DNA from: Macrostomum lignano
Lineage: Eukaryota
Assembly: GCA_002269645.1 (NCBI GenBank)
Contig: NIVC01000237.1
Location: 434,001 to 498,000, forward strand
Direction: 5' to 3'
DNA length: 64,000 bases
A program made the position numbers and the translations under genes. Each line of letters begins with the position of its first letter. The stretch's first letter is position 1. The notes beneath the pieces were generated by a model. That model was given only the letters and a program-made list of their open reading frames with translations. It had not been told where the DNA came from and made no database searches. Of this stretch, positions 2,152 through 34,531 are shown in pieces.

Positions 2152-2180
2152 AAGTGAATTGTAGAACCCAGAAAAATTAC

Positions 2181-16926: not shown

Positions 16927-18105
16927 CTAAAGCCTTCTCAAACACCGAAGACAGGCCTCCTTGTTGGGAATTTCTTCCGTCACAGCCAGATCAAGCGGTG
17001 TCTTGTAGTCATCCAGACCCTCACATTCGCTGTCACGAAATTTAGGATTGGCGCCATGCTTCATCAGCAGAGAAATCAGCTCAGGGTTTCCCGCTCTCAC
17101 CGCAAAGTGCAGAGCTGTCAGACAGGTCGAGTGCTGCTTGAAGTGAACATCAACTGACCCGTTCTCAAGCAGCCACTTGCACACCTCAAAGTGCCCATTC
17201 TGCACGCCCAGCATCAACGGAGTCAATAAGTTGCTGCTTTTAAAACACGCATCAAAATTTAGCTGCAATCGTGGCTTGGCATTACGACAGAAATTATGCA
17301 GGATAGCAAACATTTTAACCTTTCCAGCAGATGAAATGTAATGAAGCGGTGTGTACTTCTTCCTATCAGTCATTTCGAATGCCTCTTTAATTTGAGACAA
17401 GTCTATTCGTTGGGAATTTCTTTGAAAATGATTCATCACGGAAAAAATTATTTCAAGGGACTCATCAAATCTGAGCTCCGTGCACCTGTGAAACACACTT
17501 TTGCCTTCATTGTCGAAGCAGCGATAAATTGTTGCCGGATCGAAGCTCAGGAGTCGCTCAAATACGTCAGCAAAGTCGCGACTGTTCAGATGCACTGCCA
17601 GCATCATCAACGTGTGCCCATACCGAGCATTTCTGTATCCAAGCAGTCTGTCCAGAGACCCAAATCGCTCAGCCTCATTCAGCATCATTCTCGCTGCAGC
17701 TCCATTGCCTGATTCCAGTGCTGCTTCGATCGGAATGTACCCAGTTCGATCAGTCCTAAACAGCATGGACGGAATCTGGCTAACAATCCACTCTACTGTG
17801 CTGCTAGCGTCACCTGACTCGGCATACTTTTCAAGGCCGAGCTTCACAATGCTAGGGTACTCCGCGAACTCTTTCTGCACATTAGGTGGCATCTTACAGA
17901 ATGTCTGCAGCACTTGGCCAGCTGATTGATCAGACAGTTTATCCCGAGGTCCCGAGTCACCTTGCTGAGAAGGCCACGAGTCGATCCTGCTGAAGACATC
18001 AAGCGCTTCTAGAGAGGAAAAGTCGAAAAAAGGTCGGTCTGACTTATCTGCCGACATGCAAGAGAATTTGTAGCTGTTAAATCTGAAAGCCGTTTTAGAT
18101 GACAT
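16927..18105 (-). CDS. Intronless ankyrin-repeat protein, array copy 1 (392 aa; homologous start may be ATG 18057)
   Basis: About 7 ANK repeats, including YTPLHY, LTPLMLGVQNGHFEVCKWLL and LTALHFAVRAGNPELISLLMKHGA; uninterrupted ORF. Confidence 0.9.
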   Translation of the reverse strand: MSSKTAFRFNSYKFSCMSADKSDRPFFDFSSLEALDVFSRIDSWPSQQGDSGPRDKLSDQSAGQVLQTFCKMPPNVQKEFAEYPSIVKLGLEKYAESGDASSTVEWIVSQIPSMLFRTDRTGYIPIEAALESGNGAAARMMLNEAERFGSLDRLLGYRNARYGHTLMMLAVHLNSRDFADVFERLLSFDPATIYRCFDNEGKSVFHRCTELRFDESLEIIFSVMNHFQRNSQRIDLSQIKEAFEMTDRKKYTPLHYISSAGKVKMFAILHNFCRNAKPRLQLNFDACFKSSNLLTPLMLGVQNGHFEVCKWLLENGSVDVHFKQHSTCLTALHFAVRAGNPELISLLMKHGANPKFRDSECEGLDDYKTPLDLAVTEEIPNKEACLRCLRRL

Positions 18106-18572
18106 CGATTTTTCAGGTTTTTCAATTGGAGATCATGGCGATTTCAGCGCTGAAATGTGAAGAATTCGTTTTCACTTGATTTTGAGGGCTGACACAGTCT
18201 GTAACTACGATTTTTTATGACTCGTTTGATCGCAGTGTGAACAATATTTTATGCACCATCGCTGCTTTTTCTAAACTTGGAAACGAAGTTTTTTAGAAAC
18301 TGAAGGAAATTATTATTGCAGAGAGACAGTTCGCACAAGCTACTTTGATTTCACGTGGACGATATATTTATAAAGCAGCGTATAATCACACGCTTGCATA
18401 CGTTTCAGTTTAAAAACTGACTTGTATTAATAAGCTTTTGGAATTGGGAATTCAACGAATTAGACAATGTTATTTGAGCAACTTTGAAAGGGATTAAAGG
18501 TATGTACGCAAAAAGAAAGGAGAAACTATTCTTAGGAGGAGTAAAACCAAATGGGATCTATTACTTAAGAAT

Positions 18573-20210
18573 CAGTGCTGGGCGTTAACTAGTTAATTGT
18601 TTAACTAGTTAATTAACTAGTTAAATTTTTAAAAAAATCGTTAAATTTTCGTTAAATTTTTTATGTATTAACTAGTTAACAAAAATCGTTAATTTTTTTC
18701 TGAAGTTAAAGTTAAATGACAAAAGTTAATAATTCCGGGAAATGGAGTTCCCCGGGTTCAAAATCCGCGGGTTTCAATAGCTTGTATGCCATTAAAAAGT
18801 AAAATTAATACATACATAAAATAACTTCGCCTTTCTAAGCATTATTTAACGCGTCACAAACTACTATTACATGTATATATTTCAGTTACAAGTTATAATG
18901 TATAGAATATTCGGAAGATTCTGGAATCTTCAACTATTATCTATTGATATTCTACCCAAGCACTACTATAAGTTATCGTTGTACATAGGGATGTCGATTC
19001 CCCGGGGAATTTTCTTATCGGGGACCCGGGGAATTTACTGTCATTCCCCGGGGACCCCGGGAAAAAAAATAAGTAAAAAACGGCGGATAACTTAGATCTT
19101 TATAAGTCACTAAGTGGCATTTTTTAAACTTTGATTAAAGCTTTGGATGGACTACATGTTCAAGGCGCAAGGGTAAAAACTTTAAGCAATGTTTGTTTAA
19201 AACTGTATTTGACAACATGGCATCACCAAATCGTGTGCGCACCTTTATCAGAAAGGGTCCAGACTCCGGAGGCGGAAAATGCATACTCAGCAGCTGCACT
19301 CGTGGGAGGATAATTAATGAATGAGACTGTTTTTGTAATCGGAATTTTAATTTCTTGCAGATACATGTAAATCACCATTTTGTCCTGTCTAATACGGAGT
19401 ATTTTGTTATTGTATGATATACCCCCCTATGCGTCAGTGACTGACGCAGGATATGGCGCTGTGCCTGCGTCAAATGTGTCAAGCCGTCAACGCAGACCAA
19501 CACAATAGTCAGTAAGGCTTCTTTTTCCTGATGGGTTTCTACGCTCGTACGTTCAATTTGCTTGATTGAAAGACTCATAGTGAAAAAAACATTCAAACGG
19601 GTCGCTAATTTCATAAGACCGAAATTTCACAACGCCAAAAATTCTGCATGCAATACAATCCTTATTGTAAAGTTTTCTACGATGTGAAATTTCGGTCTTA
19701 TGAAGTTTCGGTCTTGTGAAGTATGGTGTTTCGGCGTTGTGAATTTCGGTCTTATGAACCCCCCCCCATTCAAACGTGTGTTGTGTTTGAAATAATACAT
19801 TGAAATAAGCAGTTTTGCGGTAAAAAAGCATAGACAGAGTTTCAATCAGCTTTCTGTGAATAATTTTCTTATTTAAATGGCAAAAATTTAGTTAAAAATG
19901 CTTTTTTTCTCCCCGGGTCCCCGGTCTAATTCCCAGGGGAGTATTCCCCGACAAGCTCCCCAGGGCGCCGCGACCTGGCCACAGCCGCGCCGCGCCGACC
20001 TGAAATTTAAAAAAACGCGCCGAACACATGTCCGGGAAAATGTCACTTTTTCCGTTAGGGAATTATTAACTTTAACTTTTAACTTTTCAGAAGTTAAATT
20101 TTGGGCAAAAGTTAAATAATTAACTAGTTACAGTTAATTTTTTTGGAGCAATTAAATTAACTTTTTAACTTTTAACGAGTTAAAAAAATTGATTAACTTG
20201 CCCAGCACTG
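18573..20210. mobile_element. Non-autonomous hAT transposon with GTTAA-rich subterminal repeats and nested inverted-repeat remnants
   Basis: TIR CAGTGCTGGGC / GCCCAGCACTG; exact 8-bp TSD TTAAGAAT at 18565-18572 and 20211-20218; no transposase ORF. Confidence 0.9.
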
Positions 20211-20598
20211 TTAAGAATGTTAAAGATTTTCAATTTCAACCAAAGGCACATTAGTAGTACCTTATAACATACACAGACTATGTTGTTAGGTTTTACAGCA
20301 AATTTTCTGATGGGTTGCATTCAGGATACAATTTTGTTTTTCTGCAATAATCCGCTGAAAAATTATAGAAAAGCTACTCAGCAGTCTCAGCTGTAAGCTA
20401 TTCTAGCAATGTCGGGACACGAAACTCTTGCTCGTATAAACAATGCACTGTCAACAGCGCTTACATAAGGACGACATTTTTACAAACAAAAATCCGGCTT
20501 GCTCGTACAAATTGAATCAGCAGGTTATATAAAAGTAAGCTCCTTAACTGAAACAAATTGCGTAGTTAAATGTATGAGCTTTATACAAACATTTCTCA

Positions 20599-21735
20599 TT
20601 ATATATCAGAAGTTCTTAAGCTCTTGACACAGGCCAGCTTATTTGGGACGTCCTCCGTCTCTGCCATAACAAGCGGTGTCTTGTAGCAACAGAGAAGATC
20701 GCACTCGCTGTCACAAAACCCAGGATCTGCGTTGTGTTCCATCAGCAGAGAAATCAGCTCAGGGTTTCCCGCTCTCACCGCAAAGTGCAGAGCTGTCAGA
20801 CATGTCGAGTGCTGCTTGTAGTTAACATCAACTGACCCGTTCTCAAGCAGCCACTTGCACACCTCAAACTGGCCCTTCTGCACAGCCAGCATTAGTGGAG
20901 TGAAAGCCGAGCTGCTTTGGTGGCAAGCATCAAAGTTCAGTACGATTTGCATCTGTGTCAGAAATATATCAAGATCTGTTAACATTGCTATATTTCCTGA
21001 GGAAGAAATATAGTGAATAGGTGTTTTCTCCCGATTGTCTGCTACCTCCAGCGCTGCCTTTGCTTCAGTAGCGATTCGATCCTTGTGCACGCTAGGGAAT
21101 CTCTTCAAAATGGTAAGAATCATGCGAAAGGATTCACAGTAGTCAAACTCTGTGCACCTATGAAGCACATTTCTACCCTCATTGTCGCAAATTCTATGCA
21201 GCCCTGCTGGATCGAATTCAATTAATTTTCGAAGGATGTCCTCGCATTCTCGACTGTTCAGCTTCACTGCAAGCATAATCAAAGAGTGTCCATATAATTG
21301 ATTTCTGTAAGCAAGCAGCCGTTGCAGTGTACCCGCATGCTTTGCAATGTCCAGCATCACTCTTGCAGCAGGCCCATTGCCCGACGCAAATGCCGCCTCA
21401 ATGGGAATGTAACCGCTTTGATCCGTTCTAAACAGCATTTCAGGAATCCGATAGATAAACCACTTCACTGTGCGTCTCGGATCGCCAGACTCTGCGTACT
21501 TTCTGAACGCCTGCTGCGCCATTCCCGGGTACTGGGCGAGCTCTTCTTGAACAGAAGAAAGCAATTTTCTAAAAGTATTCACCTCACTCCCAGGTGAAAC
21601 AACCGATATTTCATTTTGTTTGTAAGAATGACCCCGAAGAGACGGCCAAGATTCTATGCTGTTTAGAGCCTCCAAAGCTGCATCGTCAGCTGGAGCCTGA
21701 AGAAACGGTTCATCAGAATGATCTTCAGTTGACAT
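20599..21735 (-). CDS. Intronless ankyrin-repeat protein, array copy 2 (378 aa, divergent N-terminal half)
   Basis: Same repeat layout as copy 1; shares HSTCLTALHFAVRAGNPELISLLM. Confidence 0.9.
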   Translation of the reverse strand: MSTEDHSDEPFLQAPADDAALEALNSIESWPSLRGHSYKQNEISVVSPGSEVNTFRKLLSSVQEELAQYPGMAQQAFRKYAESGDPRRTVKWFIYRIPEMLFRTDQSGYIPIEAAFASGNGPAARVMLDIAKHAGTLQRLLAYRNQLYGHSLIMLAVKLNSRECEDILRKLIEFDPAGLHRICDNEGRNVLHRCTEFDYCESFRMILTILKRFPSVHKDRIATEAKAALEVADNREKTPIHYISSSGNIAMLTDLDIFLTQMQIVLNFDACHQSSSAFTPLMLAVQKGQFEVCKWLLENGSVDVNYKQHSTCLTALHFAVRAGNPELISLLMEHNADPGFCDSECDLLCCYKTPLVMAETEDVPNKLACVKSLRTSDI

Positions 21736-23085
21736 TTAACGGATTTATAAGGAGTTAGTTTAACGGCTGGCAGGTATTAGTGACACTTTTGTCATTTATC
21801 TCTTCCGTGGTAGCCTCAGTCAATTTTGATTCATCATTTCGCTGAAAATGAAGGGTAAATTGCTAAGCTAGTTAATTATCTATCGATAAACCAATAAAAA
21901 TATTAAATGTAACATTACACAGGACTCCTAATTGAACCACGTACCTGGCTAATATCCATTATTATCAATTATCAATAAATCTACCAGTGCATTTTAAAGT
22001 CACACTAAGAAAACTTATGAGGCGTCACACTGGCGCGCTTGGATGGAAACTACGAAGCTCGCATACTTTGCACGATATTCAAAACTGCCGGTAACCGTCG
22101 CAATTTTGGTGAAGAATCAACAAATTTACATGTTACAATTTATATGCTAATTTACTTTAGAAGTTACGAACTACTCTTTTAAAAGCAAACAAGCACAAGT
22201 GGAAGTAAAGCAAAAGTGAATCCCAATATATAACAGAGGACCTGATATCCCAAACAAATTTGTAATTTAATTTGACGAAATAAATTAAGCGATACGATAC
22301 CTTTTTGCAAGTAGTAGGGTGAACATTTAGAGCAAGGTTTTACCACTCAGTGACAAAAAACCGCTCTAGTAACAAACTGAAAGCAGAGTAATAGCAAAAA
22401 CGAAGTAAATGTCCATTAAATGGACACTCGCTAGGGTACAAGATATGGATTATTTGTATGGAAATTCATAAACTAGCAGAAAATATACTCATAAATAAAG
22501 ACACTGTTCCAGAGCAATTACAAGGACCGCTAGAAGTTACCTTTACCATTGTACAACGGTAATTTCTAGTGGTACTTGTGTAATTAGTAAAAGGGAAAGG
22601 ATCCTTAACAAAAGGCAGTGTAAATATATGATTTAGGTGTACAGTGGCTCAATAGTAAAAGCTCAAGTTGAGTAACTATAGGCTTAAAATGAGAAGGCGA
22701 AATGAGTTTTTAAACAAAAATTTACCTGTAGTTATTAAGTCTTATTTACACTGTCAAAACGTTACAAAAAATGAGCATTCACTTCGAGCATAATCAAAGT
22801 CTTATTCAAACCAATCTTCAAATCATGCTCAAACTCTTGAGCATGGACTCGAGCCCAGAAACTGCTCACACTCAAGAGTCTGAGCTAAGACTCTTGGGTT
22901 GAATGCAATGCAGTTGCTCTCTTGACTCAAATGTATATTGTCTAACAGACTTCCTTGCAGCGATTAGCTCGTAAAAAGCAAAAAATTACCAGATGTCATT
23001 AGCTTTGTGACATACAGTACGAGTGTATCAAGTTCCTTGAACGAACGCACGCGTCTTGAACAAACGCAACCTTGAACGAAGGTTG

Positions 23086-24207
23086 TCATGAACGCGTCAA
23101 TATTTTGATGCAAGCCTGCTTGTTTGGTATATCCTCCGTCTGTGCCATCCCCAGCGGTGTCTTGTAGTCAGCCACACCATCACAGTCGTCGTCGTTATAC
23201 TCAGGATCAGCGCCATGCTTCATCAGCAGAGAAATCAGCTCAGGGTTTCCCGCTCTCACCGCAAAGTGCAGAGCTGTCAGACAGGTCGAGTGCTGCTTGA
23301 AGTGAACATCAACTGACCCATTCACTAGCAGCCATTTGCACACATCAAAGTGGCCATTCTGCACTCCGATCATCAACGGGGTTAAAGACATGCTGCTCTT
23401 AAAGCAGGCGTCAAAGTTTATTTTGATATTTTTATGACGCAGGAATCGCTGAAGACTCTCGAGCATTTCAACATTCCCATCTAACGCGATGTAATGTAAT
23501 GGAGTGTACTTCTTTGAGTCAGTCATTTCAAGTGCATCCTTTAAGTGGCGAGTTTCATCTTTTAAAAACACACTAGAAAGATTTATTAAAAGACCAAAAA
23601 TTATCTGCAATGAGGTACAAGACTTTGACTTTGTGCACCTGTGAAACACATTACATCCGTCCAAATCGTAGCAACGATGTACCGACGTGGGGTCGAAATT
23701 CAGGAGTCGCTCAAATACGTCAGCAAAGTCGCGACTGTTCAGATGCACTGCCAGCATCATCAAAGTGTGCTCATACCGAGGATTTCTGTATCCAAGCAGT
23801 TTGTCCAGAGACCCAACTCGCTCAGCATCATTCAGCATCATTCTCGCTGCAGCTCCATTGCCTGATTCCAGTGCTGCTTCGATCGGAATGTACCCAGTTC
23901 GATCAGTCCTAAACAGCATTGACGGAATCTGGCTAACAATCCACTCTACTGTGCTGCTAGCGTCACCTGACTCGGCATACTTTTCAAGGCCGAGCTTCAC
24001 AATGCTAGGGTACTCCGCGAACTCTTTCTGTACATTAGGTGGCATCTTACAGAATGTCTGCAGCACTTGGCCGGCCGACTGAACAGCCAACTGGTCCTGC
24101 GGGTCTGGACCATTCAGAAGAGACGGCCACGTGTCAATGCTGTTGAAGGCATTCAGGGCATCTCCCTTGTCAATTGGAGCCACTAAGAACACTGTCTCTG
24201 TTGCCAT
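23086..24207 (-). CDS. Intronless ankyrin-repeat protein, array copy 3 (373 aa)
   Basis: Paralog of copy 1; uninterrupted ORF. Confidence 0.9.
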   Translation of the reverse strand: MATETVFLVAPIDKGDALNAFNSIDTWPSLLNGPDPQDQLAVQSAGQVLQTFCKMPPNVQKEFAEYPSIVKLGLEKYAESGDASSTVEWIVSQIPSMLFRTDRTGYIPIEAALESGNGAAARMMLNDAERVGSLDKLLGYRNPRYEHTLMMLAVHLNSRDFADVFERLLNFDPTSVHRCYDLDGCNVFHRCTKSKSCTSLQIIFGLLINLSSVFLKDETRHLKDALEMTDSKKYTPLHYIALDGNVEMLESLQRFLRHKNIKINFDACFKSSMSLTPLMIGVQNGHFDVCKWLLVNGSVDVHFKQHSTCLTALHFAVRAGNPELISLLMKHGADPEYNDDDCDGVADYKTPLGMAQTEDIPNKQACIKILTRS

Positions 24208-25599
24208 TCACTGCTCTGCGAAACGGATTGAATCTGGAATTTTTGAAAGGCCTCAATTGGTGAGCTTCGATGTGTATCCAAACGCTAAAAAACTTAATCG
24301 TCGGTAGGCAAATGAAAAGCTACAGCTTAGAGTAGTCTTGTGACCTAGTTTGAACGAATTAATGAACGGCGCAGTTTAATTTTAGTCGGAGAGCTACTGA
24401 AAACTCTGCAGGTATTAAAATTATACATTTTACTAATGAAATTAACAGACGAATTTGTCCTTTTGGTAAGGTGAACAATTAAATTACATTGTCTGTTAAA
24501 TTCAATAAATAACTCACTGAATCTATGACGTATCTGTAGTTGAAGACAAAATATATGCTTTAATAGGTGGTACAGCAAAAGAAGAGAAGTAAATTTACCT
24601 TCTGCTATATATTAGCAGAACACATAGACGCACTTAGAGCGAATTTACAAGTACCTGTTTCGGTGTTTTCGAGAACAATGCTATATAGACCATAAAACTA
24701 GTTTGTCAGAGATCGTCTACTAATAAGTAGAAAGTGTGGAGTGTGTAGCGGAAAGCTTGCTAGGCGAGAGTGCAGAGTATAAAAAGAGGTTCTGCTCAGC
24801 CTAGCTATTGGGTGGAGTCTAGCATTGGGCAGGCCGGCTGAGGGTCGAGGAACTCTCTAGGGACAGAAACCAGTCCTTGCAGCATCAGCCGGGTTCGATT
24901 CCAATTTTATCTAGGTGGTGTACACTATTTCACGCTAATAGCTTTCTAGAGTATTATATACATCAGAACTCTTATAACTTCCTTGAGAAGGTATGATATA
25001 ACTCAAGGTCAAATTTATATTGGCCTAAAACGTTTGATAGAAGCAAAAGTGATTGTTCTGAGAGAAGAGTGCCAAAAAACAATCAGGAAACTTTGGCAGT
25101 GTTGGCGCTTTAACAAAATATTACTGTCAGGAAATTTTGAGCACATACTCGCTTTACTAGAGGCTTACGCATTTTCAAATGAAACAAAAAACAACAGGAA
25201 AAGTTAACAATTCAATTGTCGAACATGCATAGCAAAAATCAAAAGAGGCATTTAAAGACCAGCCTGAAATACACCAATAATTTCATCTCTGACCATGACA
25301 GACGTTTCTTGCCAAACTCGAGTCTAAATAAACGCCGATCGTACGTGGCACGTTTTTGAGCCATGTCAGTCGGCAACGGGGGTATTAAATTCTGCAATCT
25401 ACGATTGCCCTAGACACTAAGATTCGGTTCCGTCAATAACTATGATTACTTTATGGCACGAAATCGTGCCATCCGTCTTCTGCCGGTTAATACAGCAGGC
25501 TGCAGGACTGGACAATTGGCTGGTCATCCAAATGTCTTGAAGGTCTGATTCTGTTTGTTTCAAGGATCGCAGAGAATGGCTGGACTTAATAAAAACTGC

Positions 25600-26718
25600 T
25601 TAAGCTCTGCGAAGACATTGAATACAAGCCTGCTTGTTCGGAATGTGTTCCGCTTCTGCTACAGCCAACGGTGTCCTGTAGCCCTCAACACCATCACACT
25701 CGCTGTCGATATACTCAGGATCAGCTCCATGCTCCATTAACAGAGAAATCAGCTCGGGGTTTCCCGCTCTCACCGCAAAGTGCAGAGCCGTCAGACAGGT
25801 CGAGTGCTGCTTGAAGTCAACATCAACTGACCCGTTCTCCAGCAACAACTTGCAAAACTCGAAGCGGCCCATCTGAACGCCCAGCATCAACGGAGTCAAC
25901 AATCTGCTGTCTTTAAAGCAGGCATCAAAATTTAGCTTCAATCGAACATGACTTGAAAATTTCAGTAGGTTTTCAAACATTTCGACTTTTCCACATGATA
26001 GAATGTAGTGGAGTGGTGTGTTCTTCTTTTTATCTGTCATTTCAAGAGCATCTTTTATTTGTGAAATCACAATATCGGAACGCTTTATCAACAATCCAAA
26101 TAAAATCTGCCAGGAGACACCAAATCCATGTTTCGTGCACCTGTGAAACACATTACATCCGTCCAAATCGTAGCAACGATGTACCGACGTGGGGTCGAAG
26201 CTCAGGAGTCGCTCAAATACGTCAGCAAAGTCGCGACTGTTCAGATGCACTGCCAGCATCATCAACGTGTGCCCATACCGAGGATTTCTGTATCCAAGCA
26301 GTTTGTCCAGAGATCCAACTCGCTCAGCCTCATTCAGCATCATTTTCGCTGCAGCCCCATTGCCTGATTCCAGTGCTGCTTCGATCGGAATGTACCCAGT
26401 TCGATCAGGCCTAAACAGCATTGACGGGATCTGTCTGACAATCCACTCTACTGTGCTGCTAGCGTCACCTGACTCGGCATACTTTTCAAGGCCGAGCTTC
26501 ACAATGCCAGGGTACTCCGCGAACTCTTTCTGCACATTAGGTGGCATCTTACAGAATGTCTGCAGCACTTGGCCGGCCGACTGAACAGCCAACTGGTCCT
26601 GCGGGTTTGGGCCACTTTGAAGAGACGGCCACGTGTCAATGCTGTTGAAGACTCTCAACGCTGTTAAATCCTCCGTCGGCGCCTCAAGAAACGGTTGCCC
26701 GCCGAGTTTACTTGTCAT
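25600..26718 (-). CDS. Intronless ankyrin-repeat protein, array copy 4 (start probably ATG 26718, MTSKLGGQPF)
   Basis: Paralogous ORF. ATG 26718 aligns with the starts of copies 2 and 6; a strong acceptor-like TTTTTGTGTTCCAG lies just upstream. Confidence 0.88.
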   Translation of the reverse strand: MTSKLGGQPFLEAPTEDLTALRVFNSIDTWPSLQSGPNPQDQLAVQSAGQVLQTFCKMPPNVQKEFAEYPGIVKLGLEKYAESGDASSTVEWIVRQIPSMLFRPDRTGYIPIEAALESGNGAAAKMMLNEAERVGSLDKLLGYRNPRYGHTLMMLAVHLNSRDFADVFERLLSFDPTSVHRCYDLDGCNVFHRCTKHGFGVSWQILFGLLIKRSDIVISQIKDALEMTDKKKNTPLHYILSCGKVEMFENLLKFSSHVRLKLNFDACFKDSRLLTPLMLGVQMGRFEFCKLLLENGSVDVDFKQHSTCLTALHFAVRAGNPELISLLMEHGADPEYIDSECDGVEGYRTPLAVAEAEHIPNKQACIQCLRRA

Positions 26719-27017
26719 GATTCTGTTTAAAATTGTTTGGACACTCTGGAACACAAAAATTTTATTAAGGTTTCTATGGAGTATTTGATGACTCTACACA
26801 TGATTTTTACTAAGTTGATAATTATCTTTTGAAGCTTCTCTAGAGACTAAGAAAGGCTTGCATAAATTTTATTGCTGCTTTTTATAGATCGGTATTCTTA
26901 TATTTACATACCAAAATATTAAATTTCATAAAGTATTTTTTCAGAAATTTTTCTTAGAACGAAAAAAACATTCCTAAACATTCTAGGCATTAAGAATATT
27001 CCTAATAATAAAAATAT

Positions 27018-27236
27018 TTGATTAAACCTGCACTAATGGACAGTTGTGCAACTGACAGCTCAGCCACAGCTCTTGCGCAGGCACCACAGCTAATGCTGGC
27101 ACCCATTTTACAGCTGGGTGAACTGAAGCAATGCAGAGTTAAGTGCCTTGCTCAAGGACACAAATTGTGCCGGTTAAATCGGGAATCGAACCCCCGAACT
27201 TCAAGTCGTGAGTCTGACACTTTAACCACTAGGCTA
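27018..27236 (-). mobile_element. tRNA-derived SINE, internally deleted copy
   Basis: Same head and TGTGTCCTTGAGCAAG...AAAATGGGTGCCAGC core as the full copy at 29042. Confidence 0.8.
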
Positions 27237-27667
27237 GAAGACGCCTGCACTTGTGAATTACGAGTACCTGTTTAGCGCTCGAATTCAGCCTGTTAATCTA
27301 AATAGAACTCAAAAATGAGTCAAATGACAGCTTCAAATTACAAAATAGAGTGAAATTTTCTAACATGAAAACTTAATTTGTAAAAACAGAATGGAACTTA
27401 ATCGAAACGTATGGCAACTTCAAGGATATAACTTATTGGAAGACAATGATTAAAACTAATTAATAACAAGCTGTCCAAAGTACAAAAAATGGATGCGACA
27501 AATGCAGTAGTTAAGAGATGCGTTAGACAAATCAATCACGAGTTAGCTGGCAAGCCAAAGCAGCGTTGATAGTTTCAGTACAAAAATCTCTTAATCTATA
27601 TTTAATAATTATCTGGATAGTCTAGCCATATACATTACAAATATATTATATTACTATTCTCATTACA

Positions 27668-28108
27668 TTACCTCAAGCAGTGAAGGCAGGCTAATCCGTT
27701 AGGGATCTCTTCAGTCAAAGCCTTGTCCAGAGGTGTCTTGTAATCAGTTAAGTTCTCGCATTCGCTGTCCCGAAAGTCGAAATCAGCGCCGTGCTCCATC
27801 AGCAGAGAAATCAGCTCAGGGTTTCCCGCTCTCACCGCAAAGTGCAGAGCTGTCAGACAGGTCGAGCGCTGCTTGAAGTGAACATCAACTGACCCGTGCT
27901 TTAGCAGCCACTTGCACACCTCAAACTGGCCCTTCTGCACTCCGATCATCAGAGGTGTCACACTTCTACTGCTTTCAAAACGCGAATCAAAATGGACAGA
28001 GATTTACGGCAGACAAAAAGTATAGTAAGCTTTTGAACATGCTAGCATTGCCTGACTTGGTGATGTAGTGCACTGCCGTCCATTTATTTTTGGAATCAGT
28101 CATTTCCA
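27668..28108 (-). pseudogene. 5'-truncated, frameshifted ankyrin copy 5 (3' part closely matches copy 6)
   Basis: LEMTDSKNKWTAVHYITKSG... then a 1-nt deletion near 28000 relative to copy 6; no N-terminal half upstream. Confidence 0.85.
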
Positions 28109-29041
28109 GAATTTGAACTTTTACGTTTTACGAGTATAATTTTGCATTTTTTTATATTTTAAAACCTTGCATTTTTTATCATCCTAGCTTTTACTTTTAT
28201 ATTCTGCAGACAATTTCTGCTTTTTAGAAAGAAAAATAACCAAGGCTGTCAATTTGATTGGGACATCCTCTTTTATGCAATTTTGAGCAGACAAATATAA
28301 GGCAGTCTATCAATAGCTTTTTCTTAACACCATATTCTGTAAGCCTGACATTCTTATAGATTTACACCCAAAATAAAGTAGTTCAATGATTTTTTGATAG
28401 CATCATCGGCAGAAATTACGAGATATATCGAATAAACCGGCTCATTTATCCGGTTCCACACGAACTAGATATTGTATTGAAATGAGGCTAAACGCCAAAC
28501 GTAAAACCACAGACACTAAAATTGTTTGGATGTTTCAAAGCACAAAGTTAAACATCAAAATAGCGTGGTATGACACTATAAGGAACCTCCCCTAAACCTT
28601 GACTTTAGTTAACACTTTAAGTCTTGACTTTTCAACAACATACATTGAGTCTCAGCTTTATTAAAAACTAAAGCAGATACAAAAAACACACTAAGGCGAC
28701 ACTAAACCAATATGTAATGTTAGCTTCTAATCTCTAATTTACAGGATGACAAAGACCTCCATGAAAAAACGAACACAACATAATCAGCTGGTATTGATAC
28801 GAATGTTTCCGTTTTGCTCTTCCTAAGCCGAGAACTAAGCAAATTTTAAACACGGGCTAGGAAGCTGTTCTCTTTTATCTGATTGACTGTGGCATAATCA
28901 AAAATGCGAGCCAGGAGTCGCCATCACAAATCCCAAATATCACAAACCCGAAAGTGCTAGCAACACCCAACCCTATTTTGGTTTTCGGAGTTATGATATT
29001 TCGGGCTTGTGAAATTTCGGGTTTATGGGAAGTGGGAAGTG

Positions 29042-29359
29042 AGGGAGTTGTAGCCTAGTGGTCGAAGCGTCGGACTCACGACTTGGAAGGTTGGGGTTCG
29101 ATTTCCTACTTCTACTGGAACAATTTGTGTCCTTGAGCAAGACACAACTCTGCATTGCTTCAGTTCACCCAGCTTTAAAATGGGTGCCAGCATTAGCTGG
29201 GGTAATTGAGGGTGTGTCGACCCCCCTCCCCCAGACCTTGGACTGAACAGCCGTACGCAGCCTTCAGATGCGCCGCGCAATAGCTGCGGCTGAGCTGTCG
29301 GTTGTACATCTGCCCATTAGGGCAGGTGTAATCAATTAGCATTTTTTGTATTATTACGA
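29042..29359 (+). mobile_element. Full-length tRNA-derived SINE with a conserved central core (resembles the Meta/MER6-type domain)
   Basis: A box TAGCCTAGTGG and B box GGTTCGATTTCC; core TGTGTCCTTGAGCAAGACAC...CACCCAGCTTTAAAATGGGTGCCAGC; TAT-rich tail; TSD TGGGAAGTG at 29033-29041 and 29360-29368. The core family name is from memory, not from a search. Confidence 0.82.
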
Positions 29360-30272
29360 TGGGAAGTGCTTATGGTGTTGTGATATTTCAGCTTTTGATG
29401 CCCCCGCAGCCACAGGGAGCATATATAGGTAGGCAACTAACAGCACAAAATTCCTCTATACTATTTCGGACCCGTTCTAGCTAGCGTCCTAAACTTGAGA
29501 CAAGTGCGAATAGTCGCACGCACAGTGCACAATTATGCACAATTTAAGCGGCACAAAATACCCATAACAAACGACTAAAATCTAGCTATCAGACGAATTA
29601 AATGTGACTCATTGCTACTGTTTCTATTCTGCTTGTTCAAACTTAATTGTTAGGCAGGGAAGCCAAAAATAATAAAAACTACTAAAGAGTAAAGCAGATA
29701 TTATAAAAGCATGCTCATAAATATACTTACACATTGTATTTGGACTTACGAACTCTGAAAAGCTGTTTTAATATTAACAGATTAGTATTAATTATGAACG
29801 TATGTAACCTACATATATATTACTCATGTATTTTACGGAGAGCTAACATAAACCAGCAAAGTATCAAGGATTGAAGAGTTCCTACCTGTTCAATATAAAA
29901 TCATAATGTAAGTATTTACAATGCGCTTAAAAAAACTTAAACTGATATATTATTCGCAAGAAAATGGGTTTTTTTAATGTCAATATTAAGAATGCTAGTG
30001 ACAGGATTAACTTGTAAAAATTAACTGAGATGTCAGCGAATAAATTCAGAACAAGCATTCGATCGCATCATACAGAACACTAATAAGCAATAATACGAGC
30101 TACAATCAGCAGAGAAATATACGCGACGGAATAAATTGACAACTGACAAGTTCGACGATGCTAAATAAACTCTCTCTGAGGCAAGGAAATCAACCGAAGT
30201 ACGTTTGTTTCCAGCAATACAATTGAAATAATCACGCCAATCAGTTCTGCAGCCGGGATGTATACACTGGAG

Positions 30273-31469
30273 TTACGACCTAACACAATTTGTCAGATCT
30301 CCAAACGCTCCGGGAGGCTGACATGGCTCAGCAACACTGGCTGACGAGCTTGCAGACCTCAAGCATTGAAGGCAGGCCAATCTGTTAGGGATCTCTTCAG
30401 TCAGAGCCATGTCCAGAGGTGTCTTGTAATCAGTTAAGTTCTCGCATTCGCTGTCCCGAAAGTCGAAATCAGCGCCGTGCTCCATCAGCAGAGAAATCAG
30501 CTCAGGGATTCCCGCTCTCACCGCAAAGTGCAGAGCTGTCAGACAGGTCGAGCGCTGCTTGAATTGAACATCAACTGACCCGTGCTCTAGCAGCCACTTG
30601 CACACCTCAAACTGGCCCTTCTGCACTCCGATCATCAGAGGTGTCACACTTCTACTGCTTTCAAAACGCGAATCAAAATCGACAGAAAGGTTTACGGTAG
30701 ACAAAAAAATGTTTAGGCTTTTCAACATGCCAACATTGCCCGAGTTGGCGATGAAGTGCAATGGCGTCCATTTATTTTTGGAATCAGTCATTTCCAGAGC
30801 CTTTTTAACTTCGCTGATACGAAAGTCCGGTTTCTTAACACTGATCAATAAACCAAAAATTATCTGAAGAGATACGGAAAACCCGAACTCCGTGCACCTG
30901 TGAAACACATTTCTTCCGTCAGTGTCGTAGCAGCGATATATTTGAGCCGGATCGAAGCTCAGGAGTCGCTCAAATACGTCAGCAAAGTCGCGACTGTTCA
31001 GATGCACTGCCAGCATCATCAACGTGTGCCCATACCGAGGACTTCTGTGTCCAAGCAGTCTGTCCAGAGACCCAACTCGCTCAGCCTCATTCAGCATCAT
31101 TCTCGCTGCAGCCCCTTTGCCTGATTCCAGTGCTGCTTCGATCGGAATGTACCCAGTTCGATCAGGCCTAAACAGCATTGACGGGATCTGTCTGACAATC
31201 CACTCTACTGTGCTGCTAGCGTCACCTGACTCGGCATACTTTTCAAGGCCGAGCTTCACAATGCCAGGGTACTCCGCGAACTCTTTCTGTACACTACGTG
31301 GCATCGCGCGAAACGTCTGCAGCACTTGGCCGGCCGACTGAACAGCCAATTCGTCGTGCGGGTCCGGGCCATTCAGAAGAGACGGCCACGTGTCAATGCT
31401 GTTGAAGGAATCCAGGGCGTCATCAGTTGGAGCCCTAAAAAATGGCTGCTCGCTGGGCTCCGAGGCCAT
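30273..31469 (-). CDS. Intronless ankyrin-repeat protein, array copy 6 (398 aa, short Ser-rich tail)
   Basis: Paralogous uninterrupted ORF. Confidence 0.9.
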   Translation of the reverse strand: MASEPSEQPFFRAPTDDALDSFNSIDTWPSLLNGPDPHDELAVQSAGQVLQTFRAMPRSVQKEFAEYPGIVKLGLEKYAESGDASSTVEWIVRQIPSMLFRPDRTGYIPIEAALESGKGAAARMMLNEAERVGSLDRLLGHRSPRYGHTLMMLAVHLNSRDFADVFERLLSFDPAQIYRCYDTDGRNVFHRCTEFGFSVSLQIIFGLLISVKKPDFRISEVKKALEMTDSKNKWTPLHFIANSGNVGMLKSLNIFLSTVNLSVDFDSRFESSRSVTPLMIGVQKGQFEVCKWLLEHGSVDVQFKQRSTCLTALHFAVRAGIPELISLLMEHGADFDFRDSECENLTDYKTPLDMALTEEIPNRLACLQCLRSASSSASVAEPCQPPGAFGDLTNCVRS

Positions 31470-32845
31470 CGCGACTTTCTGAAGCAGTCAATCAGCAAAT
31501 AAATTTGCAGCCTGTCTGGAACATGAACAGTTTTGCCGTAATGCCAACAATGAGCAGTCTTTGAGTACATTATTAGGTAAGAAGCTTAATCTAGGTATAT
31601 AGACTACTCTTTGGAATATATACAACAGTATTTTTTCCGGTTAAATATCTGGTTAATTATTATACGCCTAGGAAGGCAGTCAAATCTGGATCTGCAATCT
31701 GTTTAAGTCGAGCGGTTATTTGTTAGGTATATAGATTAAACTGAGTTGTTAGTACTTACTACACGGCGAGACGCCCAGACCTTACAGGGGGGACAGAAAG
31801 ACACAGGTAGATTGATTTACTCCGTTAACACGGGATTTACATCTGATATGGGGTATTCTTTGGGTTAAGCATCTGTTGTGTTTTACTTTGAAATAACAAA
31901 GTTTAATCTGGAGCTGGATCTAGTTCTTTAGACGGAGCTAGTTTCGGTTTTAAAACTATTTCTGAGAAGCCAATAGTCAATAACAAGCAAACTGATTTAC
32001 AAGCCAGCTCTCAAACGCACTGGCACCTCGGGAGGAAACTTGAAAAATGCAATGCGCGTGTATTTTATTTCAAGCAGTCTTCGCCATCCAACCCAAATCA
32101 TGAGGATTGAGTAGATGAGCAAATTCATCAGAGGATATGCAATTACTATTGACGTACGTACGGGTCCACCAGTGCAGGACAAAACAGGTCGTGTAATCAG
32201 CTACTGAAGCAACAATGAATATTGCTATTGAATGATACATGCTTTTAATGTTTCTACAAGGTAAAGTTAAACAAAGGTACTCTTACAATAGCTTGAATCA
32301 ATAAATCAAGTATACTGTGATAAGAAAGGAAAAATTAAATTCAGCATCTCAGCACCCTGTCAACAAGCCTTGTGTCATAAGGACCCCCTTCGAGTCTCCT
32401 ACTTTACTACGATAAAATCGACCCAGCGACGACCGAAGTTTTAAGGTGCATTTGGTGATGATAAGTAATAACATTAGATATTGTAGCAGAATACATCAAC
32501 GCGACTACACATAAATACAGTGCCGTGTGACTGTGTGAACAGGTTGAACTCTATTGAGGTCCTGTTGCCACAGAATTAAGAGTATTTAATCTTCACAAGA
32601 ATCAACACGTATAGATCAGGAAATCTAAACAAATAGAGCTAGGTACATGCAATGTACATGATAGACATTCAAAGCGCGTTTACATACAATACAATAGTTC
32701 AAGCTGCCTGATAATCACAACACACAAACGCACAAGCGTTGGGCAATTATAAACAAAACAGCTTGTTCTAACTTGTACTTTAGAACCTTTCACATTCACT
32801 ACTTGTAAGTAGTCTAGAATAGCAATTCAACAACTTCGCTACTCA

Positions 32846-34531
32846 TCAGGAGGTAGTGGCGGGAATAACAAGCTCCACGAGCTCGCCAGCTTCGATATCC
32901 AGTAGCACCTGCTTGATGACGCACCTGGAAGCATGGTCAGAGTCTGACAGAAGAGATATGGCCAGGAATACAGGGTCAGGTTCAGAATGAATGTAGCCTT
33001 CATCGGCCTTCAGATCTGGCGCGTACTGAATCAGCCGGCTGACGAACTGCTCAGACTTGGCCTTTTTGCCCAGCTGCTTGGAGAGCTCTTCGCGCCTTTC
33101 GGTGCCAAACAGTTGGAGGTCTTTGACAATCTTTTTATCTCTGAAGAATTCTGCGGGATCGCATTGCTGTTGTTGTTGCGGGATTGCTGGGTGGGGTAGT
33201 GACGAGGAAGAGGAGGCTGAGGCTGCATTGCCAGATGCAGACGCAGCGGAAGCAGGCAATGCAGGAGTTTGCGCTGGCACAGCTCTCGGCATTGAGTCCA
33301 CTGTATAGTTGTAGCTGCAGGCCAATGCACTGGGGTTAAGCGTGAGGTACTCAATACATTTATTTTTGTTTGGGATCACTTCTGTTTTGGCAATCTGCAG
33401 CGGCGTCTTGTAGCCCTCAAGCCTCTCGCAGTCCTCATCATAAAACTCTGCATCGGCTCCATGAGATCTGAGCAGGCCGATGAGGTCGTAAGAGCCCTGT
33501 TTGACTGCGAAATGCAGCGCAGTGAAGCAGGACACGGGCTGCTTTGCCGACACGTCTGCGCTGCCCTTCTCAAGCAGCCACTTGCAGGCGTCGTAGCGAC
33601 ATGATTCAACCGCAATCATCAGCGGCGTCTTGCTGTCGCTGGTCAGGAAGCGAGCATCGTAGTCAACTTGGAGAGCCTTACTTCTTGCGAACGAATCTAA
33701 AACGTTGAACATCTCGATGTCGCCAGCCTCGGCCATGTAGTGAATTGGAGTCTTATAGAACCGATCGGTCATGTCTAGCGCCTCTTTGATACTATGCTTA
33801 CTGATCTCCATGGAGTCCATCTCCAGAACAGCGTCTAGAATGATGCGGAAGGAGGTGGCATATTTGTCAACAGCGCAGCAGTGGAAGACATTGCGGCCGT
33901 GCGTGTCGTAGAACTGATAGATCTGAGTTGGGAAACTCTGCAGCAGATTAATGAGGATGTCCCTGCAGTTGGCGCTGTCAAAGTCAATTGCCAGCATTAG
34001 GAGAGTGTGCGCAGCCGAATTCCGGTGAGACAGGACAAATTTCTTCTGCGGTCCACTGCTGGCCAGCTCGATAAAGAATCTGCTGGCGTGTTGGTTCTTT
34101 TTGAGCAAGGCCCTGCCAAGCGGACTGTCCCGATAAGTTTGATTATCAACAGTTAACAGGTACTCTGGCGCCTCCCACATCAGCGACTCTATGGAACGAG
34201 TTGCACTGCCGCTGGACGCGTAGTTCAACAACAGAGCGCTGATTTTATCCTCGTAGCTAAACAGAGACTTCTGAATATTCGGTGGAAGAGCGCGGAACTT
34301 CCTAAGCTCGTCGGCGTGCTCCATAGTTGCGGGGGCATTGCTGGGAGCGGCTCTGGATGCCGGCGCTGCCCGACCATTGGCGGTGGCTGCACTTGGACGG
34401 GTCGACATGATGACACGAAAAGGTTCCGCCCGGTGTGTATCAGTACTGCTGGTTATCTTCCAGGACTGGGAAAGATTGCTGCTGCTGCCTGGACTGGGGG
34501 ATACTGCTGCTGCTGCTGCTTGGGCCTGCAT
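32846..34531 (-). CDS. Intronless ankyrin-repeat protein, copy 7, with Ala/Ser/Gln linker and putative C-terminal death-fold domain (561 aa)
   Basis: The ANK region is homologous to copies 1-6 (confident). The C-terminal ~95 aa has a helical pattern EELSKQLG...DPVFLAISLL...SRCVIKQVLLDIEAGELVELV resembling a death domain (tentative). Confidence 0.8.
   Translation of the reverse strand: MQAQAAAAAVSPSPGSSSNLSQSWKITSSTDTHRAEPFRVIMSTRPSAATANGRAAPASRAAPSNAPATMEHADELRKFRALPPNIQKSLFSYEDKISALLLNYASSGSATRSIESLMWEAPEYLLTVDNQTYRDSPLGRALLKKNQHASRFFIELASSGPQKKFVLSHRNSAAHTLLMLAIDFDSANCRDILINLLQSFPTQIYQFYDTHGRNVFHCCAVDKYATSFRIILDAVLEMDSMEISKHSIKEALDMTDRFYKTPIHYMAEAGDIEMFNVLDSFARSKALQVDYDARFLTSDSKTPLMIAVESCRYDACKWLLEKGSADVSAKQPVSCFTALHFAVKQGSYDLIGLLRSHGADAEFYDEDCERLEGYKTPLQIAKTEVIPNKNKCIEYLTLNPSALACSYNYTVDSMPRAVPAQTPALPASAASASGNAASASSSSSLPHPAIPQQQQQCDPAEFFRDKKIVKDLQLFGTERREELSKQLGKKAKSEQFVSRLIQYAPDLKADEGYIHSEPDPVFLAISLLSDSDHASRCVIKQVLLDIEAGELVELVIPATTS

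What the first reader, a model, noticed from the sequence alone, without database searches (positions are those of the whole stretch)
16927..34531. Tandem array of intronless ankyrin genes: homogenised framework around a hypervariable core
Seen in the sequence: seven same-strand paralogs with unrelated spacers. Copies 1 and 3 share 244 nt with two mismatches (17676-17919 versus 23829-24072) yet diverge abruptly on both sides. A 79-nt block encoding KQHSTCLTALHFAVRAGNPELISLLM is near-identical in copies 1-6, including copy 2 (20740-20818, one mismatch to 17062-17140), whose N-terminal half is very divergent. Between these blocks, ANK repeats 3-4 (HRCT to FDAC/FDSR) differ extensively and carry indels: ELRFDESLEIIFSVMNHFQRNSQRIDLSQ / KSKSCTSLQIIFGLLINLSSVFLKDETRH / KHGFGVSWQILFGLLIKRSDIVISQ / EFGFSVSLQIIFGLLISVKKPDFRISE. 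Established: ankyrin repeats are binding scaffolds, and a constant framework with a variable binding region typifies diversified recognition families. Inference: segmental gene conversion keeps the framework uniform while the core diversifies, giving a natural DARPin-like repertoire, possibly for innate immunity or allorecognition.
Basis: partly seen in the sequence, partly recalled or inferred. Interest (0 to 1): 0.8.

Follow-up and report, generated by a model that had tools for sequence, protein, structure and literature searches.

The report
Flatworm ankyrin gene cluster, patchwork conversion
A cluster of six intact ankyrin-repeat genes plus one fragment in the flatworm Macrostomum lignano has had two internal stretches repeatedly copied between neighbouring genes; this is ordinary concerted evolution, and nothing shows that the divergent middle is a fast-evolving recognition site.

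Summary
The window is Macrostomum lignano DNA. It carries six intact intronless ankyrin-repeat ORFs and one 3' fragment, all on the minus strand, with unrelated spacers. The quoted near-identical blocks are exact: 244 nt with 2 mismatches, and 79 nt with 1.

The mosaic exists at synonymous sites. Raw synonymous difference (pS) is 0.07-0.19 in segment A (alignment codon columns 70-228) among copies 1, 3, 4 and 5. It is 0.17-0.42 in segment C (columns 313-372) among copies 1-5. Everywhere else it is saturated (0.5-1.0). Protein constraint cannot produce this pattern, so segmental gene conversion is supported.

A second, collinear locus (GenBank NIVC01001350.1), probably the homeologous copy, adds three points:
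- Some conversion happened after the two loci split.
- One tract there overwrote the "core".
- Three of its five copies are disabled.

The "hypervariable, diversifying core" is not supported:
- Between the two loci the core changes no faster than the rest (pN 0.019 versus 0.026), with pN/pS about 0.4.
- Against the outgroup copy 6, segment A is as divergent as the core.
- The array holds only 5-7 copies, and the proteins show no signal peptide or membrane segment.

Best reading: old, lineage-restricted cytosolic ankyrin paralogs under moderate purifying selection, partly homogenised wherever identity still allows conversion. This is a new member of a known kind. Interest is low to moderate.

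The parts
16927..18105 (-). c1, intact intronless ankyrin-repeat ORF, 392 aa
   Evidence: ORF. Pfam Ank_2 1e-21. Its counterpart M1 in the second locus is 92% identical in protein but has lost its start codon and carries a nonsense codon.
20599..21735 (-). c2, intact ORF, 378 aa. It is the most divergent of the short copies, and only segment C is shared with the others.
   Evidence: pS to the other copies is 0.64-0.68 in segment A but 0.21-0.42 in segment C.
23086..24207 (-). c3, intact ORF, 373 aa
   Evidence: 93% identical to BOX15_Mlig001172g1. AlphaFold2 model has mean pLDDT 76 and shows an ankyrin solenoid over residues about 105-373.
25600..26754 (-). c4, intact ORF. The likely ATG start is at 26718, giving 372 aa.
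27668..28110 (-). cF, a truncated 3' partial duplicate of a c5-type gene (last ~110 codons readable in frame)
   Evidence: tblastn. 93.5% identical over 446 nt to c5 at 30356-30798.
30273..31469 (-). c5, intact ORF, 398 aa, with a short extra C-terminal tail
32846..34531 (-). c6, intact ORF, 561 aa. It is the outgroup copy, with a long disordered N-terminus and an extra ~160-residue C-terminal tail. It takes no part in conversion.
   Evidence: No Pfam or PDB sequence match for the tail.
17479..17949 (-). Segment A (alignment codon columns 70-228) in c1. The homogenised tract is shared with c3 (23632-24102), c4 (26134-26604) and c5 (30891-31361).
   Evidence: pS is 0.07-0.19 among c1, c3, c4 and c5, against 0.64-0.79 to c2 and c6. 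Coordinates.
17053..17232 (-). Segment C (columns 313-372, ANK repeats 5-6) in c1. The homogenised tract is shared with c2 (20731-20910), c3 (23212-23391), c4 (25726-25905), c5 (30474-30653) and cF. It contains the 79-nt block.
   Evidence: pS is 0.17-0.42 among c1-c5, against 0.72-0.89 to c6. Block mismatches.
17380..17478 (-). The 'core' divergence island (columns 229-262) in c1. It covers the turn, outer helix and inserted loop or helix of ANK repeat 3. Equivalent stretches: c2 21052-21150, c3 23533-23631, c4 26047-26133, c5 30798-30890, c6 33779-33871.
   Evidence: Nucleotide difference is 41-62% between all paralogs but 0-5% between the two loci. Secondary-structure mapping.
17233..17379 (-). 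Segment B (columns 263-312), a second divergence island covering ANK repeat 4 and the loop to repeat 5. Coordinates are for c1; other copies are listed.
   Evidence: pS is 0.59-1.09 in all pairs. A conservation minimum lies at columns 286-305.

Best explanation
This is an old tandem cluster of ankyrin-repeat genes, found so far only in Macrostomum lignano. The proteins are probably cytosolic.

The duplications are ancient: synonymous sites are saturated over most of each gene and the spacers are unalignable. Ectopic (interlocus) gene conversion between neighbouring copies has repeatedly overwritten two internal stretches. One is the N-terminal helical/ANK1-3 segment in copies 1, 3, 4 and 5. 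The other is the ANK5-6 segment in copies 1-5.

The stretches in between are the repeat-3 outer helix plus inserted loop, repeat 4 and its loop, the C-terminal cap and the N-terminus. They are too divergent and too full of indels to pair, so they persist as 'islands of divergence'. Unequal crossing-over also acts on the array. It left a partial duplicate (cF) here, and a c5/c4 fusion gene in the second locus.

The genes themselves are under moderate purifying selection and most likely act as intracellular protein-binding scaffolds.

What is shown: the mosaic at synonymous sites, the segment-wise incongruence, the post-split tracts, and purifying selection. What is inferred: that the islands persist mainly because divergence blocks conversion, and the biochemical role of the proteins.
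For: Organism and restriction. The best hit is M. lignano BOX15_Mlig001172g1. The only close relatives are the window's own copies and one other contig. A profile search of 1.84 billion representatives returned no other full-length match.

Ankyrin fold. Pfam, the AlphaFold2 model and Foldseek hits to AnkB, IkB-zeta, Bcl-3 and DARPins.

Mosaic at synonymous sites. Tables. Segments A+C against the rest give pS 0.16-0.21 against 0.59-0.77, Fisher p from 1e-9 to 5e-20. The permutation test of run lengths is significant for every c1-c5 pair and unconvincing for pairs with c6.

Incongruent relationships. Segment-wise distances.

Conversion after the locus split:
- In the 244-nt block c1-c3 differ at 3 sites, c1-M3 at 4 and c1-M1 at 13.
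- Seven sites show the 'concerted' pattern, all in segments A and C.
- In segment C, c3-M3 differ by 8.3% while M3-c1 differ by 2.8%.
- Divergence between the loci is raised in the converting copies (c1 4.3%, c3 4.4%) compared with c2 (1.5%) and c6 (2.3%). Published SNP divergence between subgenomes is 1.9-2.4% (PMC10733133).

GC-biased signature. GC3 is 0.53-0.70 in the tracts against 0.27-0.50 in the islands, and uniform in the non-converting c6.

Unequal crossover. M45 has c5's upstream flank and c4's downstream flank.

Purifying selection. Pooled pN/pS between the loci is 0.45, p = 1.4e-6. All six window ORFs are intact.

Cytosolic. A hydropathy scan shows no clear signal peptide or membrane segment.
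Against: - The segment boundaries were drawn after seeing the alignment, so the Fisher p-values are descriptive.
- The number of clearly post-split 'concerted' sites is small (7). M1 is a decaying pseudogene, which inflates the c1-M1 difference.
- The neutral explanation for why the islands persist was not separated from selection against homogenisation. The variable stretches lie in neighbouring inter-repeat loops of repeats 3-4 and 4-5, which could form one surface patch.
- No expression or interaction data were available for the window's copies.
- Only two loci from one inbred line were compared.
Confidence: 0.8

Rival explanations
1. The core and its neighbouring loops form a specificity-determining surface. 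Selection keeps them different, or drives them apart, while conversion keeps the scaffold uniform. The result is a small repertoire of binders used in immunity or allorecognition.
For: - The least conserved stretches (columns 236-264 and 286-305) are the loops and outer-helix ends of adjacent repeats 3-4 and 4-5, and they carry indels.
- Core pN among paralogs (0.35-0.59) is higher than in the other saturated segments B and C-cap (0.17-0.42).
- All six window copies, each with a different core, are intact.
Against: - Between the loci the core gives pN/pS of about 0.39, and its rate is no higher than the rest.
- Core pN never exceeds pS among paralogs.
- Segment A is as divergent as the core when compared with c6.
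- In the second locus the c3-type core was copied over another gene, the c4- and c5-type cores are missing, and 3 of 5 copies are disabled.
- There are only 5-7 copies, with no secretion or membrane signal.
- The inner helices, which form the canonical ankyrin binding face, are conserved.
Confidence: 0.12
2. There is no gene conversion. The near-identical blocks simply reflect very strong purifying selection on framework residues, or on an overlapping nucleotide-level element such as an antisense gene or an RNA structure.
For: The blocks encode well-conserved ANK framework motifs. Antisense ORFs of 105-153 aa overlap segment A in c1, c3, c4 and c5.
Against: - The conservation is at synonymous sites. 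c6 encodes a similar peptide with 33 of 79 nucleotide differences.
- c2 keeps the protein motifs of segment A but is saturated at synonymous sites.
- No antisense ORF of 100 aa or more is listed over the corresponding part of c2 or c6.
- No Rfam family matches.
- Which copy is closest changes from segment to segment, and sometimes between the two loci.
Confidence: 0.04
3. The mosaic is an assembly artefact (collapsed or chimeric reads in a repetitive polyploid genome), or the ORFs belong to a transposable-element family.
For: The published M. lignano assembly Mlig_3_7, to which the second locus belongs, is known to be redundant and partly chimeric between subgenomes (PMC10733133). The window's own assembly was not identified. 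A gypsy-like element lies at 41-45 kb.
Against: - The same tract boundaries recur in an independently assembled collinear contig, for example c1 and M1 share the column ~80 and ~205 boundaries.
- The blocks are short and internal to otherwise divergent genes with unique spacers.
- Copies occur only at these two syntenic loci.
- Pfam finds no transposon-type domain in the ORFs. Apart from one short inverted repeat flanking cF (27003-27239 / 29048-29353), the spacers share no repeats that could be element ends.
Confidence: 0.03

Closest known systems
Concerted evolution of tandem duplicates by segmental gene conversion with 'islands of divergence' (textbook cases from my own knowledge: human gamma-globin HBG1/HBG2, RHD/RHCE, red/green opsins; theory of Walsh 1987 and Teshima & Innan 2004)
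   Same: Same-strand tandem paralogs. Short internal tracts are near-identical even at synonymous sites and are flanked by old, saturated sequence. Relationships between copies change from segment to segment. Tracts are GC3-richer. Unequal crossover products accompany the conversions.
   Different: A different gene family and phylum. There are six members with two separate tracts whose membership differs: A has copies 1, 3, 4 and 5, while C has copies 1-5. Whether selection maintains the islands was not tested.
Designed ankyrin repeat proteins (DARPins): constant consensus framework with randomised beta-turn and inner-helix positions
   Same: The ankyrin solenoid fold, with Foldseek hits to DARPin structures at E of about 1e-7. 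Some surface positions equivalent to the randomised ones vary between paralogs.
   Different: The main variable stretches are the outer helix plus inserted loops, not the beta-turn and inner helix. The framework is not uniform, since the N-terminus, segment B and the C-cap are saturated. The internal repeats are only 1-11 of 33 residues identical to each other.
Fungal NLR-type allorecognition proteins with hypervariable ANK/WD/TPR repeats (HET-e/d type; from my own knowledge)
   Same: Repeat-protein genes in which recombination and conversion shape variability, which has been proposed to serve non-self recognition.
   Different: In those proteins the internal repeats of one protein are highly similar (more than 85%) and shuffle among themselves, positive selection acts at binding positions, and a NACHT/NB-ARC domain is present. 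Here the internal repeats are dissimilar, no NACHT domain is present, and no positive selection was detected.
IkappaB / NF-kappaB p105-type proteins (about 7 ANK repeats with inserts, followed in p105/p100 by a death domain)
   Same: About seven ANK repeats with an insertion between repeats. IkB-zeta and Bcl-3 are among the better structural matches (TM 0.65-0.77 normalised to the target). c6 has a C-terminal helical tail.
   Different: Sequence identity is only 18-25%, the generic ANK level. The c6 tail matches no Pfam or PDB death-domain sequence and is modelled at pLDDT below 50. There is no evidence of homology.

Membership tests
Ankyrin-repeat proteins (Pfam Ank clan) | Tandem ~33-residue helix-turn-helix repeats scoring above the Pfam gathering thresholds | tested here: met
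   All six ORFs score Ank_2 71-83 bits (cut-off 27.3) and Ank 52-71 bits (cut-off 21.1).
Ankyrin-repeat proteins (Pfam Ank clan) | Solenoid of stacked helix pairs in the three-dimensional structure | tested here: met
   The AlphaFold2 model of c3 shows seven helix pairs between residues ~105 and 373, mostly at pLDDT 80-97. Top Foldseek PDB hits are all ankyrin-repeat domains.
Tandem gene family under concerted evolution by gene conversion | Synonymous divergence strongly heterogeneous along the genes (tracts versus old background) | tested here: met
   pS is 0.16-0.21 in segments A+C against 0.59-0.77 elsewhere, Fisher p from 1e-9 to 5e-20.
Tandem gene family under concerted evolution by gene conversion | Relationships between copies differ between segments, and runs of shared sites are longer than chance | tested here: met
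   Segment-wise distance matrices. Permutation test p = 0.0005 for 8 of 10 c1-c5 pairs, 0.001 for c2-c5 and 0.0105 for c2-c4.
Tandem gene family under concerted evolution by gene conversion | Within a tract, paralogs in one locus are closer to each other than to their counterparts in a sister locus | tested here: met
   In the 244-nt block c1-c3 differ at 3 sites and c1-M1 at 13. In segment C, M3-M1 differ by 2.8% and M3-c3 by 8.3%. Seven concerted sites lie only in A and C. The counts are small. Most homogenisation of segment A predates the split (28 orthology-type sites).
Diversified recognition repertoire (constant framework, hypervariable binding surface) | Excess of non-synonymous change (dN/dS above 1) in the variable region | tested here: not met
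   Between the loci the core gives pN/pS 0.39 (6 non-synonymous, 4 synonymous changes), and its pN of 0.019 is no higher than the rest at 0.026. Paralog estimates are 0.25-0.79 with saturated dS. Power is low.
Diversified recognition repertoire (constant framework, hypervariable binding surface) | Variable residues lie on the canonical binding face (beta-turn/finger tips and inner helices) | tested here: inconclusive
   The inner helices are conserved. The variable stretches are outer-helix ends plus inserted inter-repeat loops of repeats 3-4 and 4-5.
Diversified recognition repertoire (constant framework, hypervariable binding surface) | Large and/or highly polymorphic copy number maintained by selection | tested here: not met
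   The window has 6 genes plus 1 fragment. The sister locus has 5 copies, of which 3 are disabled and one core type is duplicated. No other loci were found.
Diversified recognition repertoire (constant framework, hypervariable binding surface) | Expression or function linked to immunity or allorecognition | not testable with these tools
   No expression data were available. Literature searches for the locus tags and for M. lignano ankyrin genes found nothing relevant.
Transposable-element ORF family | Dispersed copies, transposon-type protein domains, terminal repeats | tested here: not met
   Copies occur only in this array and its syntenic sister locus. Only Ank domains are present. The spacers are unique.
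IkappaB / NF-kappaB p105-like (ANK plus death domain) | Recognisable death domain or family-specific sequence similarity | tested here: not met
   Pfam at E up to 10 finds nothing in the c6 tail. PDB sequence search gives only chance hits with E of 0.67 or worse.

The most novel reading that the evidence does not exclude
The divergence islands (the repeat-3 insert and the repeat-4 loop, adjacent in the solenoid) are specificity-determining. Selection protects them against homogenisation in the functional subgenome. The array would then encode six scaffold-sharing adaptors with distinct targets, possibly co-transcribed as one trans-spliced unit. This would be a small natural 'constant scaffold / variable patch' ankyrin repertoire in a flatworm.
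Probability: 0.13. Interest if true: 0.5.

Novelty: new member of a known kind. Interest (0 to 1): 0.27.

Why it matters
This is a clean, well-delimited example of mosaic concerted evolution in a neopolyploid flatworm. Conversion tracts, unequal crossover products and the decay of one homeologous copy can all be read in about 20 kb.

It shows how a 'constant framework, hypervariable core' pattern can arise simply from homogenised flanks around old sequence. That is a useful caution when such patterns are read as signs of recognition repertoires.

The family itself is uncharacterised and was found only in M. lignano. If the islands turned out to be protected by selection, it would be a natural analogue of designed ankyrin binders. 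The present evidence does not point that way.

Tried and rejected
- Rfam scan of the whole window: no match.
- Pfam at E up to 10 on the c6 C-terminal tail and on the N-terminal halves of c6 and c3: nothing beyond a weak Ank_2 hit.
- PDB sequence search with the c6 tail: only chance hits.
- AlphaFold2 on c6: the tail and N-terminus come out below pLDDT 50, so no fold search was attempted on it.
- Profile search of 1.84 billion representatives: the list is swamped by giant multi-ANK proteins, with a cut-off near 188 bits. It excludes close relatives but cannot exclude distant single-copy orthologs.
- Literature search for the locus tags Mlig001172 and Mlig013882, and for 'Macrostomum lignano' plus ankyrin: nothing on this family.
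- HGT or retrogene origin was considered. No supporting evidence was found and it was not pursued.
- Antisense ORFs over segment A were considered as a reason for nucleotide conservation. This was rejected because no antisense ORF of 100 aa or more is listed over the corresponding part of c2 or c6.
- A third homeologous locus was not found among the protein hits.
- dN/dS among paralogs in the core is unreliable because dS is saturated. The comparison between the two loci was used instead.

Full report
WHAT IS THERE

[quoted passage not shown] Copy 3 is 93% identical to GenBank protein BOX15_Mlig001172g1. The only other close relatives in 5.8 billion proteins are the window's own products and three more proteins, all encoded on that same contig, NIVC01001350.1.

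ORF listing and tblastn show seven copies, all on the minus strand:
- c1 16927-18105, 392 aa
- c2 20599-21735, 378 aa
- c3 23086-24207, 373 aa
- c4 25600-26754, with the likely ATG at 26718
- cF 27668-28003, a fragment holding only the last ~110 codons
- c5 30273-31469, 398 aa
- c6 32846-34531, 561 aa

All six full ORFs pass the Pfam ankyrin thresholds. An AlphaFold2 model of c3 (mean pLDDT 76) shows about 60 disordered N-terminal residues and some lower-confidence helices. Seven stacked helix pairs follow, from residue ~105 to the C-terminus. Foldseek returns only generic ankyrin domains: AnkB, IkB-zeta, Bcl-3, DARPins and FEM1B.

c6 has an extra C-terminal tail of about 160 residues. It matches nothing in Pfam or the PDB and is modelled with low confidence. 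A simple hydropathy scan shows no clear signal peptide or membrane segment, so the proteins are most likely cytosolic. The highest value, 1.81, falls on the outer helix of repeat 3 in c3.

The spacers share no similarity apart from one short inverted repeat.

Neighbours. Downstream of c1 lies an aprataxin-like (HIT/zf-C2HE) gene and then an SMN-Tudor gene. This is inferred from the gene calls on the collinear second locus and from the ORFs. Beyond c6 lie a gypsy-like retroelement, a formin-like ORF and cadherin exons. Those three labels are my reading of the translations and were not checked against Pfam.

CHECK OF THE OBSERVATION

Both quoted blocks are exact: 244 nt with 2 mismatches between c1 and c3, and 79 nt with 1 mismatch between c2 and c1. 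The 79-nt block differs at 0-4 positions among c1-c5 and cF, but at 33 positions in c6. The variable peptides and their indels are as quoted.

Two corrections apply. The 'seventh paralog' is a fragment. The c1/c3 block ends sharply only on its gene-5' side, while on the other side identity declines gradually.

IS IT GENE CONVERSION?

I built a codon alignment and split it into six segments (alignment codon columns): N-terminus 1-69, A 70-228, core 229-262, B 263-312, C 313-372 and C-cap 373-413.

The raw synonymous difference pS shows a sharp mosaic:
- Segment A: 0.07-0.19 among c1, c3, c4 and c5, but 0.64-0.79 to c2 and c6.
- Segment C: 0.17-0.42 among c1-c5, but 0.72-0.89 to c6.
- Core, B, C-cap and most of the N-terminus: saturated (0.5-1.0) in every pair.

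The contrast between A+C and the rest gives Fisher p from 1e-9 to 5e-20. These values are descriptive, because the boundaries were chosen after inspection.

Protein-level constraint cannot produce this pattern. c6 encodes a similar peptide in the 79-nt block with 33 nucleotide differences. c2 keeps the motifs of segment A while being saturated at silent sites.

A GENECONV-style permutation of polymorphic sites is significant for all ten c1-c5 pairs. Eight give p = 0.0005, c2-c5 gives 0.001 and c2-c4 gives 0.0105. No pair with c6 is convincing. Third-position GC is higher in the tracts (0.53-0.70) than in the islands (0.27-0.50). It is uniform in c6, as expected if conversion is GC-biased.

THE SECOND LOCUS

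NIVC01001350.1 positions 80422-106035 (here called M) is collinear with the window at about 93-95% identity, spacers included. It is most simply one of the homeologous subgenomes of this neopolyploid. Three subgenomes are described, with SNP divergence of 1.9-2.4% (PMC10733133).

M carries five copies:
- M6, M3, M2 and M1 are the counterparts of c6, c3, c2 and c1.
- M45 has c5's upstream flank and c4's downstream flank and C-cap. From the N-terminus through segment B it is almost identical to M3, and the core is 0 differences from M3.

M45 therefore records an unequal crossover that removed the c5-cF-c4 interval. It also records a conversion tract of roughly 900 nt that ran straight across the 'core'.

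Evidence for conversion after the loci split:
- In the 244-nt block c1 differs from c3 at 3 sites and from M3 at 4, but from its own counterpart M1 at 13.
- In segment C, M3 is 2.8% from c1 and M1 but 8.3% from c3.
- In the quartet c1, c3, M1, M3 the seven 'concerted' sites all lie in segments A and C. The other segments give only orthology-type sites.

The outer boundaries of c1's tract (columns ~80 and ~205) are shared by M1. Most of the homogenisation of segment A is therefore older than the split.

The copies that convert are more diverged between the loci (c1 4.3%, c3 4.4%) than those that do not (c2 1.5%, c6 2.3%).

IS THE CORE HYPERVARIABLE OR POSITIVELY SELECTED?

The evidence says no.
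- Between the two loci, the core of the four counterpart pairs has 6 non-synonymous and 4 synonymous changes. That gives pN/pS of 0.39. Its pN of 0.019 is no higher than the rest of the genes at 0.026.
- Among paralogs, core pN (0.35-0.59) stays below pS (0.63-0.85), with dS saturated.
- Against the outgroup c6, segment A has pN 0.51, about the same as the core (0.53-0.59). The striking contrast inside c1-c5 is therefore produced by homogenised flanks, not by an exceptional core.
- The 'framework' is not uniform either. The N-terminus, B and the C-cap are as old as the core.

Structurally, the least conserved stretches (columns 236-264 and 286-305) are the outer-helix ends and inserted loops joining repeats 3-4 and 4-5. 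The inner helices, which make the canonical ankyrin binding groove, are conserved. The two variable loops sit on adjacent repeats, so a specificity patch cannot be excluded. This is not the DARPin layout, however. The internal repeats are also dissimilar to each other (1-11 of 33 residues), unlike fungal hypervariable ANK repeats.

ARE THE GENES FUNCTIONAL?

Pooled pN/pS between the loci is 0.45, p = 1.4e-6. All six window ORFs are intact.

In M, three of the five copies are disabled:
- M1 has ATG changed to ATT and CAG changed to TAA.
- M2 has a 2-bp deletion.
- M6 has GAG changed to TAG.

The substitutions are unlikely to be long-read errors. One homeologous array is thus decaying while the other is kept.

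The GenBank gene models on M derive from transcripts (PMC5730564), so at least that locus is transcribed. M3 and M1 carry the same transcript prefix (Mlig001172, g1 and g4). Under that paper's naming scheme this suggests one transcriptional unit or one transcript cluster. That reading is an inference, not a demonstration.

VERDICT

The array is a textbook-type case of mosaic concerted evolution with divergence islands, in an uncharacterised ankyrin family found only in M. lignano.

The proposal of a diversifying, DARPin-like immune or allorecognition repertoire has no support from rates, copy number, localisation signals or the behaviour of the sister locus. It keeps a small residual probability because power is low and the variable loops are adjacent.

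Rival explanations are each contradicted by specific results. These rivals are pure purifying selection, an overlapping nucleotide-level element, an assembly artefact and a transposon family.

Novelty: new member of a known kind. Interest: low to moderate.

Noticed in passing
window 9771-13277 (also 9445-9620): A 23-bp satellite of about 152 copies (3.5 kb) lies in what appears to be an intron of the aprataxin-like gene downstream of c1. The homeologous locus aligns to it over only about 330 bp (about 14 units), so the satellite has expanded or contracted strongly between subgenomes.
   Followed up: partly
window 1-2150 and ORF 1713-2465 (-): 29-bp and 36-bp minisatellites run into an ORF whose N-terminus looks like an SMN-type Tudor domain. 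The 36-bp unit is read in frame as a 12-residue repeat (CCDHHLCPLLVT), so the repeat may be coding or may mark the end of an exon.
   Followed up: no
window 27003-27239 and 29048-29353: An inverted repeat of about 160-240 nt (82-87% identical) flanks the region holding the truncated copy cF. It could be the ends of a mobile element or a scar of the rearrangement that produced cF.
   Followed up: no
window 18572-20211: About 1.6 kb between c2 and c1 is absent from the homeologous locus, where the alignment blocks abut at M 13965-13972. It is an insertion here or a deletion there, and its content was not examined.
   Followed up: no
window 41160-45200 (+): A GC-rich (56-63%) stretch with long ORFs that read as gag, protease, reverse transcriptase, RNase H and integrase, that is a Ty3/gypsy-like LTR retrotransposon. 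The label comes from reading the translations, not from a Pfam scan. The reading frame is split between several ORFs.
   Followed up: no
window 36253-38675: A 167-bp tandem repeat (36417-37110, about 4 copies) has an inverted copy at 38175-38675 (93-95% identical), forming a large palindromic arrangement just upstream of c6's side of the array.
   Followed up: no
L001/L002 (NIVC01001350.1 80422-106035): The homeologous array has 5 copies instead of 7. Three are disabled, while every copy in the window is intact. This asymmetric decay of one subgenome copy fits early fractionation after the genome duplication.
   Followed up: yes
window 52624-55485 (+) and 56218-61443 (+): A 953-aa ORF with a polyproline stretch followed by what looks like a formin FH2-type region, and a series of cadherin-repeat exons interrupted by a 22-bp satellite (59538-60654). 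Both labels come from reading the translations.
   Followed up: no
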